64,000 nucleotides of DNA. Source: Ascidiella aspersa (Eukaryota). This document shows positions 20,505 through 23,853 of the stretch, piece after piece. Each line of letters begins with the position of its first letter. Position 1 is the stretch's first letter. The notes under the pieces were generated by a model. That model was not told the DNA's origin and did no database searches. It was given only the letters and a program-made list of their open reading frames with translations. The translations under genes and the position numbers were made by a program. The DNA lies in assembly GCA_963924565.1 (NCBI GenBank), contig OZ004607.1, positions 10,354,001 through 10,418,000 on the forward strand, in the 5' to 3' direction.

Positions 20505-23500
20505 ATGAGCATAGGGGCAGATATCAGTCAAAGTATTCAGCAAGCCATTAAGGCCAAGCTGATTGAACTGAGCTCCTATGTTGATGATGAGCTGCCTGAT
20601 TACATTATGATCATGATTGCAAACCGCAAAAAAGAGGAGCAGATGACAGAATCGCTCTCACTGTTTCTCGGCAACAACACCAAAGTCTTCACGAAATGGC
20701 TGTACGAGCTGCTTGCCACTTTGCGAGGCAAAAAAGACGATTCTGCGCCCAAGTCATCCAGTTCTACCTCTACTACAAAGCAAGTTGATAAAAAAGAGAA
20801 GCCTACCGCTGTTGCTTCAATTACGCCTGTCAACGAAGAAAGCAACCACTTGGAAATTAAAAAGGAGTTAGAGGTCCCTTCAAAAGTGGAAGCTCAACCA
20901 ACAGCAATCAGTTCTGCCCCAGCTGAAGCTGAGATAGAAATACTGCCAGACAGCGGAGATGTTTTGGACTTGGAGTTGTATGGCTCTAATGAAATGTCAG
21001 CTAATGACTCAATGCTAGCTGAAGGCCCCCCTGAAGCAACACAGGCTTCTAGTTTGTCTAAGGAAACCATCTCTTCTAAAACTTCCAACAAGCGCACAAA
21101 CAATTCAAAATCAAACTCTGAAAATAAAGAAAAGGTGGTTACCAAACGGAAAATACAAATTGTTGCCACCGGAAGTAAATCAAAACCAAAGACGTCTGCT
21201 GATAAAGACGCGAAAAGTTTTAAAGTGGAAAAGGAAAAAGAAAAGATAACGTACAAATCTTCATCCTCCAACAGTCGAAATTTGGAATCTGTAAAATCTT
21301 CCTCAAAGCATGACGATAAACAGAAGGGATCATCGGGCAGAGAAAAAACCAAAAAACTGAAACGCTCAAGATCATCAAAAGATGATTCTCTGAAGCGAAA
21401 GCACTCATCCAAGCAGACCCGAGAGTGGGATATGGTTAAAGAAAGCAAAGGCTCCTGGAAAGAGAGTGATAATTATGAAGCACAGTCAAAGAGACAATCA
21501 AGCCAGCAGCCGAGATACAATAAGAACGACAAACAAGAGGATGATGATGACGAACCTGTTGTAAGAAAAATTGCGAGCACCGTACAATCTTCAGTTTCAA
21601 CCAACCGAGAATACATTAGTGAAAGTGAAGAAGAAAACTTTAGTTCCAGCGCTGTCATCAGCAAGGTTTCTGTCCCGGAGAGACGTTCGCGTTTGCCTCC
21701 AACAAAACAGGCCAATAAGTCGCTGCTTTTAAGAGCTGTTTCCGAGGCCCAGACAAGCATGAAACGTCACAAAAAATCAAAAGATAAATCGCAAAAGGAC
21801 ACTGTAAAATCAGTGAAGTCAAGACTGGGAAAACCTAAAGATCGCTCCCCTGAAATCACTAAACCCAAAAAGAGTAAACAAAATTTCGAGGAAGACTTTG
21901 AAATTCAAATAGAGCAGCCAATAAAACGAACACTTAAACGAAAAAACATTGACAGTTCAGTTGTGATAAAAAAAACTAAATCTCTCTCAAAACATCCCCC
22001 AAGCGATGATTCACATGACGACAAAACAGTGCAATACAAGAAAACAAAACAAGTCAAAAGTTTAAAATCTGATTTGGAGCCGGTTTCTTCTACTGTTGAA
22101 GATAACAATTTATACACTGGAGACAGAAGGCGCTTTGTTTCAAGAAGTTCTTTGTCGGATGATGCTGAAGATAGTAGGAAACAAATCAGCGTTGTGCGAA
22201 ATGCATCTGAGGTTATGGACGACTCTTCGGTGCAATTTGACCGCAGAAATTTGCATGTAACAAAGAGTGCAGAGCCTTCTCCTAACGCTTCTGTGCAATC
22301 TTCTGATTCGGAACCAGTGGCACCTCCAAGAAAACGACAATCCGTCAAGAAACAGGGTAAAAGCACGAAAAGACGATCACCCAGCCCTTGTTTTATCGTT
22401 ACCCTGGACGGAACGTCTTCCAAATCAAAAAACGAAAATCAGAAACCTGATTCCCCGTCAAAAGTCGAGCAACCACAAAAGAAACCGTTCAAGGCTGTTC
22501 CAATTGTGGCTCCAAGTAGTGCTTCATCTGCAACAATAAAAGGTCAAAAAACGAATTCTGTTAAACCACTTACGATTAAAAAGGACAGTATTGAAACCAG
22601 TGATGATGAACTGACTATTATGCGCGAAAAACTTTTGAAAATGCAAGAAGAAGCAAGAAAATTAAAGACATTACAACAAGAGCAGCTAAACATTTTAAAG
22701 CAAAACCCCGCTGCTTCAAAAACTGCAGCGAAACCGGAAACTAACAGGTCAATTCATGTTGCCAATGTTCATTTTTCAGCCACCGAAAAAAAACTTTCTG
22801 AATATTTTGGCATATGTGGAAAAGTGCTAAGGCTGACCATCTTGAAAGATCAATTTACTGGTCATCCTAAAGGGTAAGAATAAAAATTTTGTGCAATACA
22901 GCAAACTATTTTATTCAACAATACACAGGGATTTTTTGGGCTTCAGGCTTAGTTTTAATTTTTACATCATGTGTTTCTGAACTTGTTCTATTATAAAATT
23001 GTAAAATATTTTTCAAAAACCTAATGCTGTTTTGCAGTAGTTTGCCATTTTGAAGGGAATAAAAACGAATACTAATTTAAAAAATTTAAAAAGCAACACT
23101 ATGTATAATAACATTTTAGTTTATAGACCTATATTTATTAAACTTTTGTATTTCATGTTAACTTGGCATGATGCCAAACAAAAACTTTTTTGGTCAAAAA
23201 AATAGAAATTTTGCTAGTTTCTCTGGAGCAATTATGCCATTTATAAAGAAAATATCTGCCAAAATTTGCTGATACTGATACATCAGTAGAAGCTAAATAT
23301 CCACCAGTTTTAAGGATAAACCGATATCTCTACATAATACTATAGCAATATTAAAGTATAGTTTAATTTAGTATAAGCCATATCTATGCTTTTGCAATTT
23401 TCTTAAATTTTAGATTAAAAGCTGCCAAACCAAATCATCGCCGACCCAATTTTGGTTAAGAAACACTAACTTAAATTAATGTGCTGGTTCCTAAAAGATA

Positions 23501-23853
23501 TGTTATTATTGAAATAAAAACAGTAGTACAGCACATTAAACCAAGATATTATTGTTATTACCAGCTTTGCATATCTGGAGTTTGAAGAGCAAAGTTCTGT
23601 GGAAACTGCCCTGGCACTTGACAACACAATGTTTTGCAGTCGCCTGATAAAAGTGACTCGCAAGAGCAGTGCCCCGTCCACCCCCGTCAAGCTTGCCCCA
23701 ACCCGTTTTGTGGCAAGGAGACCCAGAAGCTTTGGAGTCCACCCAAGAGCAAGATATAGTGCCAGGGCCGCATTGGCCACTTTTCGGCCTCGATATCCTG
23801 CAACCCGTGGACGAAATAAGACCTGGGTCAAACCTGGGTTTGTTGCCACATAA
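20505..23853 (+). CDS. ZC3H14/Nab2-like PWI protein with C-terminal PABPN1-like coiled coil + RRM (no CCCH fingers seen); 885 aa, 2 coding exons
   Basis: Exons 20505-22873 and 23565-23853, with a phase-2 intron inside GHPKG|FAYLEF. The N-terminus MSIGADISQSIQQAIKAKLIELSSYVDDELPDYIMIMIANRK..LSLFLGNNT..FTKWL matches the ZC3H14 PWI-like domain. Internal PERR..LPPTKQANKSLLLRAVSEAQ and FIVTLDG are ZC3H14 motifs. ELTIMREKLLKMQEEARKLKTLQ followed by RSIHVANVHF..TILKDQFTGHPKGFAYLEF..ALALD..F.SRLIKV matches the PABPN1 coiled coil and RRM. Confidence 0.92.

What the first reader, a model, noticed from the sequence alone, without database searches (positions are those of the whole stretch)
20505..23853. 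Chimeric nuclear poly(A) regulator: ZC3H14/Nab2 body ending in a PABPN1-type coiled coil + RRM instead of CCCH zinc fingers
Seen: one uninterrupted 2.37-kb exon carries a ZC3H14-like PWI N-terminus (20505-~20730), the ZC3H14 internal motifs PERR..LPP.KQANK.LLL.A.SEAQ (~21670-21755) and FIVTLDG (~22390), and then ELTIMREKLLKMQEEARKLKTLQ and an RRM (..GHPKG|FAYLEF..ALALD). These are followed by an Arg-rich tail and a stop. No C-x5-C-x4/5-C-x3-H finger is readable before PRADC1 starts 634 bp later. Established: vertebrate ZC3H14 and yeast Nab2 bind poly(A) through tandem CCCH fingers and restrict tail length. PABPN1 binds through an RRM and stimulates poly(A) polymerase through the coiled coil directly upstream of it. 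Inference: this protein joins the scaffold of one nuclear poly(A) regulator to the RNA-binding and PAP-stimulating module of its functional antagonist. That implies either a lineage-specific domain swap or an ancestral PWI-CC-RRM architecture lost in vertebrates. Because the junction lies within one exon, a gene-model artefact is unlikely.
Basis: partly seen in the sequence, partly recalled or inferred. Interest (0 to 1): 0.85.

Follow-up and report, generated by a model that had tools for sequence, protein, structure and literature searches.

The report
Tunicate ZC3H14 with PABPN1-type RRM

Summary
A two-exon gene (20505-22873 and 23565-23853, 885 codons) encodes three ZC3H14 parts: the PWI-like N-terminus and two internal ZC3H14 motifs. 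These are followed by a coiled coil, a PABPN1-type RRM split by one intron, and an Arg-rich tail. The tail ends in the ZC3H14-type peptide WVKP.

No CCCH finger occurs anywhere in the 64-kb window. No ZC3H14-type finger array was found in the 308-Mb assembly. The assembly also holds a separate, intact-looking canonical PABPN1 gene.

The same architecture occurs in Ciona, Phallusia, Clavelina, Styela, several unnamed assemblies and a marine planktonic relative of unconfirmed taxonomy. It is therefore at least as old as the ascidian orders sampled, and it is not a gene-model artefact.

The N-terminus groups with deuterostome ZC3H14, so this is the ZC3H14 orthologue with its RNA-binding cassette replaced.

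The source of the RRM is unresolved. It is PABPN1-type, but ML trees place it outside the canonical metazoan clade, and AU tests reject neither a metazoan PABPN1/PABPN1L origin nor kinship with plant proteins.

A new point: green plants and Trebouxia algae have a widespread, unnamed PWI-coiled coil-RRM family with the same RRM signature (NVHF instead of NVDY).

Poly(A) binding and PAP stimulation are inferred, not shown. No RNA-seq could be laid on this genome.

The parts
20505..22873 (+). Exon 1: start codon, then 789 codons plus 2 nt. It holds the whole ZC3H14-like body, the coiled coil and the first half of the RRM in one open frame.
   Evidence: ORF list; donor AAAGG|GTAAGA read; full-length collinear tunicate homologues.
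20535..20723 (+). PWI-like N-terminal domain of the Nab2/ZC3H14 type (aa 11-73).
   Evidence: Pfam PF01480, E 1.9e-6. BLASTP gives 57-65% identity to ZC3H14 of most vertebrates and amphioxus over 9-11% of the query. 45-51% identity over 100 aligned columns. The AF2 model has pLDDT 70, and nine of its ten best PDB fold matches are PWI domains, including Nab2-N 2v75 (3lcn follows at rank 12), at weak E-values.
21672..21752 (+). Conserved ZC3H14 internal motif VPERRSRLPPTKQANKSLLLRAVSEAQ (aa 390-416).
   Evidence: Coordinates. The same motif is in tunicate, amphioxus, Saccoglossus and vertebrate ZC3H14 and is absent from the plant and algal proteins. The own-genome match to amphioxus ZC3H14 aa 250-339 has E 7e-9.
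22392..22412 (+). Conserved ZC3H14 internal motif FIVTLDG (aa 630-636). In canonical ZC3H14 it lies upstream of the zinc fingers.
   Evidence: present in the tunicates, amphioxus, Saccoglossus and gecko ZC3H14; absent from the plant and algal proteins.
22608..22709 (+). Coiled-coil helix of PABPN1 type (aa 702-735). It includes L720, the equivalent of PABPN1 L136.
   Evidence: The PDB match 2m70 covers aa 702-790. Alignment to canonical PABPN1. The AF2 model of the Ciona savignyi orthologous module has a helix at 12-60 with pLDDT above 90. Numbering anchored.
22749..22873 (+). First half of the RRM: RNP2 reads SIHVANV (His where PABPN1 has Y175), followed by the NVHFSAT signature, up to GHPKG.
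   Evidence: Pfam RRM_1 at aa 751-790. 3ucg, 3b4d and 2jwn align to aa 742-790. Signature analysis.
22874..23564 (+). The only intron: 691 nt, GT..AG, phase 2. It splits the RRM between GHPKG and FAYLEF.
   Evidence: Sequence. The same break is present in seven other assemblies whose ORFs stop right after G(H/Q)(P/S)KG. It is spliced in the planktonic relative: P0276 (604 aa, ENA contig) stops there, whereas P0012 (693 aa), whose cluster includes a MERC (ERR1719259) member, continues.
23565..23664 (+). Exon 2, second half of the RRM: RNP1 reads (G)FAYLEF, with F791 equivalent to PABPN1 F215.
   Evidence: Pfam RRM_1 profile positions 41-70. 3ucg, 3b4d and 2jwn match at E 2-4e-4.
23665..23850 (+). 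Arg/Pro-rich disordered tail. It ends in the ZC3H14-type C-terminal peptide W-V-K-P (23824-23835).
   Evidence: Translations. W[VI][KR]P occurs in the last 20 aa of 97 of 108 ZC3H14 hits and of 0 of 65 canonical PABPN1-type hits; tunicates carry WVKP or WVNP. The tail is disordered in the AF2 model.
23851..23853 (+). Stop codon TAA.

Best explanation
This is the tunicate orthologue of ZC3H14/Nab2. In it, the cassette of five tandem CCCH poly(A)-binding zinc fingers has been replaced by a cassette of the PABPN1 family: a coiled-coil helix, a single RRM and an Arg-rich segment. The ZC3H14 N-terminal PWI-like domain, the two internal ZC3H14 motifs and the ZC3H14 C-terminal W-V-K-P peptide were all kept.

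The replacement happened before the sampled ascidian orders diverged, and the result is under purifying selection.

The inferred mechanism is as follows. The protein still attaches the ZC3H14 scaffold to nuclear poly(A) tails. The PWI domain serves as a protein-interaction module for the pore or export machinery, and the conserved motifs have unknown partners. Attachment, however, now runs through an RRM plus Arg-rich tail instead of zinc fingers. In other words, a non-homologous poly(A) reader has displaced the original one.

The retained coiled coil keeps the residue that PABPN1 needs to stimulate poly(A) polymerase. The protein might therefore also contact PAP, or compete with the genome's separate canonical PABPN1. 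This last step is the least secure.

The most likely donor of the cassette is a metazoan PABPN1/PABPN1L-type paralogue that diverged fast after the fusion.
For: **Shown: gene model and domains**
- One ORF plus one intron gives 885 codons, with PWI and a split RRM.
- The RRM and coiled coil match PABPN1-type structures best: 2m70, 2jwn, 3ucg, 3b4d.
- In the AF2 model of the orthologous Ciona savignyi module, Foldseek aligns the human PABPN1 RRM at 47-50% identity.

**Shown: conservation across tunicates**
- Full-length collinear homologues with PWI and RRM exist in Phallusia, Clavelina, Ciona and Styela, in unnamed assemblies and in a planktonic relative.
- Conservation comes in islands: PWI 66-85%, PERR-KQAN motif 42-77%, RRM 60-82%, against 16-40% in the linkers.

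**Shown: the body is ZC3H14**
- The N-terminus groups with deuterostome ZC3H14 against the plant proteins (SH-aLRT 97).
- The internal motifs are shared only with animal ZC3H14.
- The C-terminal W[VI][KR]P is a ZC3H14 feature, not a PABPN1 feature.

**Shown: the rest of the genome**
- ZC3H14 queries from amphioxus, chimpanzee and Saccoglossus hit only this locus, and only with their N-terminal parts.
- The PF14608 hits examined (eight of nine) are isolated fingers at scattered loci; two read like ZFP36 and RBM22 fingers from recall.
- A separate canonical PABPN1 gene lies on contig C3. It has exons for the coiled coil, RNP2, the RRM and KRTNKHG, and it ends ...SWYSPY.

**Supports the inference**
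- By raw similarity the tunicate module scores highest against metazoan PABPN1 and PABPN1L (100-104 bits). The plant PWI-RRM proteins rank 83rd and 89th (76-77 bits).
- Under LG+C20, the tree that holds tunicates with Metazoa is 7.2 lnL better than the free tree. It puts them next to vertebrate PABPN1L.
- F215 (RNA binding) and L136 (PAP stimulation) of PABPN1 are conserved here as F791 and L720. Their roles are taken from PMC4456446.
- PABPN1 binds RNA through its RRM together with the Arg-rich C-terminus (PMC5340911).
Against: - The splice is therefore supported only by homologues.
- In the free ML trees the tunicate RRMs lie outside the metazoan canonical clade (99/99) and pair with the plant and algal PWI-RRM proteins (99/95). 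Under LG+F+G4 that pairing is 11-13 lnL better than a metazoan placement.
- Tunicate and plant RRMs share NV-H-F where 98% and 95% of canonical sequences have D and Y.
- The chimeric gene shares no intron position with this genome's canonical PABPN1 gene.
- The RNP2 aromatic residue Y175 is His here, and the KRTNxPG motif after the RRM is missing.
- S. pombe Pab2 has the same module yet does not stimulate its PAP (PMC5340911), so PAP stimulation cannot be assumed.
- The absence of CCCH exons rests on searches whose sensitivity for very short exons is limited.
Confidence: 0.72

Rival explanations
1. Ancient architecture. PWI-coiled coil-RRM would be an old eukaryotic form of the Nab2/ZC3H14 family, shared by descent between green plants or algae and tunicates. 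The tunicate gene would then descend from that lineage rather than from a swap inside ZC3H14.
For: - Panicum and Trebouxia proteins have the same order of parts. They match the tunicate protein at both ends: PWI at E 1e-11 to 2e-11, CC-RRM at E 3e-25 and 6e-26.
- Streptophyte clusters of 460, 71 and 73 members carry PWI plus RRM.
- The free ML tree pairs the tunicate and plant RRMs at 99/95, and this is the best topology under LG+F+G4.
- The two groups share the NVHF signature.
- Trebouxia ends in NVYIRPG, much like the tunicate NKTWVKPG.
Against: - The first 100 aa of the tunicate N-terminus are 45-51% identical to deuterostome ZC3H14 and 22-26% identical to plants, and they group with the former.
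- The PERR-KQAN and FIVTLDG motifs are animal ZC3H14 features that are absent from the plant proteins.
- Amphioxus, hemichordate and vertebrate orthologues all carry CCCH fingers. Descent would therefore need a second gene kept only in tunicates and lost in other animals.
- No other animal cluster with PWI plus RRM was seen.
- The AU test does not favour this topology significantly.
- Plant proteins rank low by similarity.
Confidence: 0.1
2. Horizontal acquisition. The CC-RRM cassette, or a whole algal PWI-CC-RRM gene that then recombined with ZC3H14, entered the stem tunicate from a green alga.
For: - The RRM tree pairs tunicates with the Trebouxia and Panicum proteins.
- When the Trebouxia cassette is used as a query, tunicate proteins are the best long non-Trebouxia hits.
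- The NVHF signature is shared.
- From general knowledge, not tested here: tunicates are filter feeders with a known foreign cellulose synthase gene.
Against: - Only 34-35% identity between the cassettes.
- The tunicate cassette scores higher against metazoan PABPN1.
- The AU tests are not significant.
- Long-branch attraction, plus a few convergent positions, explains the pairing equally well.
Confidence: 0.05
3. Incomplete model. The RRM ending would be only one isoform, and CCCH exons exist further away or elsewhere; or two neighbouring genes have been read as one.
For: No RNA data for this genome could be obtained.
Against: - The body-to-coiled-coil junction lies inside one uninterrupted ORF here and in seven other assemblies.
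- The Ciona, Clavelina, Phallusia and Styela database proteins, and the 2.4-3.3 kb contigs of the planktonic relative (cluster with a MERC member), contain the whole architecture.
- There is no CCCH pattern in any frame of the 64-kb window.
- No ZC3H14-type fingers were found genome-wide.
Confidence: 0.03

Closest known systems
ZC3H14 / Nab2 family (human ZC3H14, Drosophila Nab2, C. elegans SUT-2, yeast Nab2)
   Same: - PWI-like N-terminal domain: 57-65% identity by BLASTP to ZC3H14 of most vertebrates and amphioxus over 70-90 aa, and a PWI fold.
- The internal PERR...KQAN...EA and FIVTLDG motifs.
- The C-terminal W[VI][KR]P peptide.
- A single copy in the genome; the N-terminus groups with deuterostome ZC3H14.
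   Different: It has no CCCH zinc finger at all, whereas the family review states that the Zn-finger domain is conserved in all Nab2 orthologues (PMC6371209). A coiled coil, RRM and Arg-rich segment occupy that position. Nearly the whole gene is one exon.
PABPN1 / PABPN1L (ePABP2) / S. pombe Pab2: nuclear single-RRM poly(A)-binding proteins
   Same: - A coiled coil directly upstream of a single RRM, followed by an Arg-rich tail.
- 47-50% identity of the orthologous Ciona savignyi RRM module to the human PABPN1 and Xenopus ePABP2 RRMs in the Foldseek alignments.
- The equivalents of F215 and L136 are conserved.
   Different: - About 700 aa of ZC3H14 body replace the acidic, Ala-rich N-terminus.
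- NVHF replaces the near-invariant NVDY.
- His stands at the Y175 position.
- There is no KRTNxPG motif after the RRM.
- The tail ends in WVKPG rather than a [WFY]xxPY end.
- The RRM lies outside the canonical metazoan clade in free ML trees.
- The genome keeps a separate canonical PABPN1 gene.
Plant and green-algal PWI-coiled coil-RRM proteins (e.g. Panicum hallii LOC112899577, Trebouxia WJX77_009911), annotated only as 'RRM/PWI domain-containing' or hypothetical
   Same: The order of parts is the same (ZC3H14-type PWI, long disordered linker, coiled coil, PABPN1-type RRM). So are the NVHF(S/A)AT signature and the lack of KRTNxPG. The Trebouxia proteins have a similar C-terminal peptide.
   Different: - Only 22-26% identity in the N-terminal 100 aa and 34-35% in the CC-RRM.
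- They lack the animal ZC3H14 internal motifs.
- Common descent is not shown.
- I could not establish whether any member has been studied.

Membership tests
Nab2/ZC3H14 family | N-terminal PWI-like fold domain | tested here: met
   Pfam PF01480, E 1.9e-6. 57-65% identity by BLASTP to most vertebrate and amphioxus ZC3H14. AF2 model with pLDDT 70; nine of its ten best PDB fold matches are PWI domains (RBM25 3v53 at TM 0.67, Nab2-N 2v75, PRP3 1x4q; Nab2-N 3lcn follows at rank 12), though with weak Foldseek E-values of 0.2-2.
Nab2/ZC3H14 family | Tandem CCCH (Nab2-type, PF14608) zinc fingers that bind polyadenosine | tested here: not met
   No Pfam zf-CCCH_2 hit in either exon, whereas amphioxus and chimpanzee ZC3H14 each give five fingers. 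No CCCH pattern in the window. No finger array in the assembly.
Nab2/ZC3H14 family | Orthology: single genomic counterpart, family-specific internal motifs and C-terminal peptide | tested here: met
   This is the only locus hit by ZC3H14 queries. PERR-KQAN and FIVTLDG motifs. W[VI][KR]P end. N-terminal tree.
PABPN1 family | Single RRM of PABPN1 type preceded by a coiled-coil helix | tested here: met
   Best PDB sequence hits are 2m70, 2jwn, 3ucg and 3b4d. The AF2 model shows a helix plus an RRM with pLDDT above 90, and Foldseek aligns the PABPN1 RRM at 47-50% identity. Of 929 representative hits, most of the best single-RRM ones are proteins of about 200-300 aa matched across both coiled coil and RRM; a sample carries PABPN1 names.
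PABPN1 family | Residues needed for RNA binding (Y175, F215) and for PAP stimulation (L136) | tested here: inconclusive
   The F215 equivalent (F791) and the L136 equivalent (L720) are conserved. Y175 is His in this species and Tyr in Styela and P0282. The roles come from PMC4456446. No biochemical test was possible.
PABPN1 family | Placement inside the canonical PABPN1/PABPN1L clade | tested here: inconclusive
   The free ML tree excludes it from the metazoan clade (99/99). AU tests do not reject inclusion: p 0.61 under LG+C20, and 0.17-0.21 under LG+F+G4.
PABPN1 family | Post-RRM KRTNxPG motif and a C-terminal Arg-rich tail ending in [WFY]xxPY | tested here: not met
   An Arg-rich tail is present, but KRTNxPG is absent and the end is WVKPG(FVAT).
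Plant/algal PWI-CC-RRM proteins | Same domain order and the NVHF RRM signature | tested here: met
Plant/algal PWI-CC-RRM proteins | Common descent of the whole protein | tested here: inconclusive
   The PWI tree separates the plant proteins from the tunicate plus animal ZC3H14 group. The RRM tree is ambiguous. The internal motifs are not shared.

The most novel reading that the evidence does not exclude
The poly(A)-reading module of the Nab2/ZC3H14 family has been exchanged between a CCCH-finger type and an RRM type more than once in eukaryote history. On this reading, the PWI-linked RRMs of tunicates and of green plants or algae form one distinct RRM lineage, marked by NVHF instead of NVDY and by the loss of KRTNxPG. 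The two groups would share it by deep descent or by transfer, not by convergence. Plants would then have an unrecognised ZC3H14 counterpart, and tunicates would be the only animals that use it.
Probability: 0.15. Interest if true: 0.8.

Novelty: new variant of a known kind. Interest (0 to 1): 0.62.

Why it matters
[quoted passage not shown] In human cells they act antagonistically in poly(A)-dependent RNA surveillance (PMC11788927). ZC3H14 loss causes intellectual disability, and the family is described by its zinc fingers (PMC6371209).

A whole chordate subphylum, the sister group of vertebrates, runs ZC3H14 without fingers and with the reader module of the other protein. This is a natural domain-swap experiment. 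It suggests that what must be conserved is the tethering of the PWI scaffold to poly(A), not the way poly(A) is read.

It also offers a tractable system, Ciona. There one can ask which ZC3H14 functions depend on finger-specific properties, such as tail-length restriction and mRNP compaction, and which depend on the scaffold.

The parallel plant family, with the same two substitutions at near-invariant RRM positions, hints at a rule for how this RRM must change when it is tethered to a PWI scaffold. It also points to an uncharacterised plant counterpart of ZC3H14.

Tried and rejected
- **Spliced protein.** The exons were handled separately by reference. The trees use only the exon-1 part of the window gene, together with intact orthologues.
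- **Search for other long proteins with this cassette.** Querying with the Phallusia and Trebouxia C-terminal regions returned only tunicates and Trebouxia. The word-based prefilter even missed Panicum, so a blank here is weak evidence.
- **Representative search.** It listed only 150 of 929 hits, so other lineages with the architecture may be hidden.
- **Phylogeny.** The first 'careful' tree gave 99/95 for tunicate plus plant. The constrained search then found a better tree under the same model, so I do not rely on that support value. Background IQ-TREE jobs were killed between calls, and the analysis was redone on 44 rows.
- **'PRARY' in the tail.** I rejected it as a PABPN1-tail marker: it is too degenerate across tunicates and occurs in scattered canonical proteins.
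- **Literature.** No paper in the library links ZC3H14 with Ciona, or with tunicates among those listed. My recollection that Arabidopsis At3g12640 belongs to the plant family could not be checked; one paper lists it only as a nuclear RRM protein.
- **Earlier findings of this scan.** They hold nothing on these genes.

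
Full report
**1. 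What is in the sequence**

On the + strand an ORF runs from the ATG at 20505 for 790 codons. It ends ...FTGHPKG, followed by TAA. The DNA reads AAAGG|GTAAGA at 22873/22874 and ...attaccag|CTTTGCATATCTGGAG at 23564/23565. Splicing there is in phase 2 (GG+C = Gly) and continues FAYLEFEEQSSVETALALD..., up to a TAA at 23851-23853. This gives 885 codons.

Pfam finds a PWI domain at aa 11-73 (E 1.9e-6) and the first 40 positions of RRM_1 at aa 751-790. Exon 2 supplies profile positions 41-70.

No CCCH pattern exists downstream, and the whole window holds only one chance match, on the other strand. The identity of the next gene was not confirmed.

**2.

The coiled coil and RRM match PABPN1-type solved structures best: Citrus PABN 2m70 over aa 702-790, then Xenopus ePABP2 2jwn and human PABPN1 3ucg and 3b4d. 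Generic RRMs are several orders of magnitude weaker.

An AF2 model of the orthologous C-terminal module of Ciona savignyi (P0122) shows three parts:
- a long helix (pLDDT above 90);
- a canonical RRM (pLDDT about 96);
- a disordered tail.

Among its many RRM fold matches, the PABPN1 and ePABP2 RRMs stand out with 47-50% identity.

An AF2 model of the N-terminal 95 aa (pLDDT 70) has nine PWI domains among its ten best PDB matches, including Nab2-N 2v75, with 3lcn at rank 12. The E-values are weak.

By sequence, the N-terminal domain is 57-65% identical to most vertebrate and amphioxus ZC3H14.

**3. It is the ascidian form of ZC3H14, and possibly the general tunicate form**

Full-length collinear homologues come from four named species:
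- Phallusia mammillata (annotated 'ZC3H14', 815 aa);
- Clavelina lepadiformis (898 aa);
- Ciona intestinalis (LOC100181905, 849 aa);
- Styela clava (annotated 'nucleolin 2-like', 969 aa).

All run from PWI through PERR-KQAN, FIVTLDG, the coiled coil and the RRM to ...NK(T/K)WVKPG.

Seven further unnamed assemblies show one ORF from Met1 to G(H/Q)(P/S)KG followed by a stop. That is the same giant exon and the same RRM-splitting intron.

A more divergent cluster (P0012) includes a member from the MERC catalogue (accession ERR1719259). I take these to be marine metatranscriptome data and the 2.4-3.3 kb contigs to be transcripts; the source records could not be read. The 604-aa form from an ENA contig (P0276) stops at GYSKG, whereas the 693-aa form continues with FAYLEF. 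This suggests that the intron is spliced as modelled in that organism. Its placement among tunicates rests on sequence grouping only.

Within tunicates, conservation comes in islands:

| Region | Identity to the window protein |
|---|---|
| PWI | 66-85% |
| PERR-KQAN motif | 42-77% |
| FIVTLDG motif | 45-70% |
| Coiled coil | 25-74% |
| RRM | 60-82% |
| Linkers | 16-40% |

Both the ZC3H14-derived parts and the PABPN1-type parts are therefore constrained.

**4. What the rest of this genome holds**

Amphioxus, chimpanzee and Saccoglossus ZC3H14 hit only this locus, and only with their N-terminal domain and the PERR-KQAN region. Their finger regions hit nothing.

The Nab2-type finger HMM gives nine isolated matches at scattered loci. 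The eight I examined are single fingers, and none forms an array. Two read like the fingers of ZFP36 and RBM22, an assignment made from recall and not tested.

A separate canonical PABPN1 gene lies on contig C3 at about 30.905-30.908 Mb. Its exons encode ELEAIKAKVKEMEAEAEKLKEMQ......ADARSIFVGN, VDYGATAEEL...RGRQLQV, KRTNKHGFSSTD and ...FRGRARSWYSPY. They are 75-82% identical to turtle and annelid PABPN1.

None of its intron positions coincides with the single intron of the chimeric gene.

**5. Which parts come from where**

The N-terminal tree puts tunicates in one group with amphioxus, Saccoglossus and vertebrate ZC3H14 (SH-aLRT 97), apart from the plant and algal proteins.

The two internal motifs occur only in animal ZC3H14 and the tunicate proteins.

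- W[VI][KR]P lies in the last 20 residues of 97 of 108 ZC3H14 hits.
- It occurs in 0 of 65 canonical PABPN1-type hits, 13 of which end in [WFY]xxPY.
- The tunicate proteins end in ...WVKPG.

So both ends of ZC3H14 are retained. The coiled coil, RRM and Arg-rich cassette sit where the five fingers were. This is an internal cassette replacement, not a 3' fusion.

**6. Where the cassette came from is not resolved**

Among 1.84 billion representatives, most of the best single-RRM hits to the coiled coil plus half-RRM are proteins of about 200-300 aa matched across both parts; a named sample of them are PABPN1, PABPN1L or unnamed RRM proteins from animals, a fungus, a choanoflagellate and an amoebozoan.

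The trees and tests gave the following results.
- **81-row ML tree (LG+C20 PMSF).** The metazoan canonical clade includes sponge, nematode, PABPN1L and this genome's own PABPN1 exon. It is supported 99/99 and excludes the tunicate proteins, which pair with Panicum and Trebouxia at 99/95.
- **Constrained search, same model.** With tunicates and Metazoa held together, the search found a tree 7.2 lnL better than the free one. In it the tunicates sit next to vertebrate PABPN1L (p-AU 0.61 against 0.39).
- **LG+F+G4 on 44 rows.** The ranking reverses. Tunicate plus plant is best, while tunicate plus Metazoa has p-AU 0.17 and tunicate plus PABPN1L has 0.21.

Nothing is rejected.

By raw similarity the tunicate cassette is closest to metazoan PABPN1 and PABPN1L (100-104 bits). 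The plant proteins rank 83rd and 89th.

I therefore favour a metazoan PABPN1-family donor with fast divergence after the fusion, at roughly 65%.

**7. The parallel in plants**

Panicum hallii LOC112899577 (PWI E 1e-4, RRM E 1e-13) and two Trebouxia proteins have the same order of parts. They match the tunicate protein at both ends.

In the Atlas, streptophyte clusters of 460, 71 and 73 members carry PWI plus RRM, and no animal cluster does.

Tunicate and plant RRMs share His-Phe where 98% and 95% of canonical sequences have Asp-Tyr. They share a few further positions, and both lack KRTNxPG. Whether this is convergence, deep descent or transfer remains open.

The ZC3H14 identity of the tunicate N-terminus, motifs and C-terminus argues against descent of the whole gene from a plant-like ancestor.

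**8. How it probably works**

Three points are established in the literature:
- PABPN1 binds poly(A) through its RRM together with the Arg-rich C-terminus, and its coiled coil is needed to stimulate PAP (PMC5340911).
- F215A abolishes RNA binding and L136A abolishes PAP stimulation (PMC4456446).
- The Nab2 N-terminal PWI domain is a protein-interaction module for Mlp1 and Gfd1, and the Nab2 fingers bind poly(A) (PMC6371209).

In this protein the F215 and L136 equivalents (F791, L720) are kept. Y175 is His.

My inference is that the protein still tethers the ZC3H14 scaffold to nuclear poly(A), but through an RRM-type reader. It may also touch PAP or compete with canonical PABPN1. S. pombe Pab2 shows that this module does not always stimulate PAP, so I rate that step at about 30%.

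**9. Novelty**

The sequences are already in public databases under uninformative or misleading names. No paper found in the searched library links ZC3H14 with Ciona or tunicates. The family review states that the finger domain is conserved in all orthologues.

I class the finding as a new variant of a known kind.

**Limits**
- There are no reads for this genome.
- Searches for very short finger exons have limited sensitivity.
- Only 150 of 929 representative hits could be seen.
- The RRM alignment is short (138 columns).

Noticed in passing
G000:C3:30904677-30907671 (loci L010, L020, L021): A canonical, intact-looking PABPN1 gene of this genome, with five recognisable exons: the coiled coil, RNP2, the RRM, KRTNKHG and ...SWYSPY. 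None of its intron positions matches the intron of the chimeric gene.
   Followed up: partly
P0224 (Panicum hallii LOC112899577), P0121 and P0307 (Trebouxia spp.): A widespread plant and green-algal family with a ZC3H14-type PWI, a linker, a coiled coil and a PABPN1-type RRM. It is annotated only as an RRM/PWI-domain or hypothetical protein and may be the plant counterpart of ZC3H14. Its RRM shares NVHF(S/A)AT with the tunicate proteins.
   Followed up: partly
window 23824-23835; C-termini of P0013-P0120: A short C-terminal peptide, W[VI][KR]P, is conserved at the very end of vertebrate and hemichordate ZC3H14 and of the tunicate proteins. Trebouxia has a similar end (Y-I-R-P). I know of no assigned function for it.
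   Followed up: partly
P0126, P0132, P0133 (representative-search hits): Proteins with two tandem PABPN1-type RRMs. P0133 looks like a plant PABN with an internal duplication. These may be real tandem forms or assembly or model artefacts.
   Followed up: no
Pfam gave no hit at E <= 0.1 for this piece, so the neighbour's identity is unverified.
   Followed up: partly
window 20505-22873: The whole ZC3H14 body, which I recall (not checked here) is split over many exons in vertebrates, is a single 2.37-kb exon here and in seven other tunicate assemblies. This points to extensive intron loss, or to a retro-copied origin of the chimeric gene.
   Followed up: no
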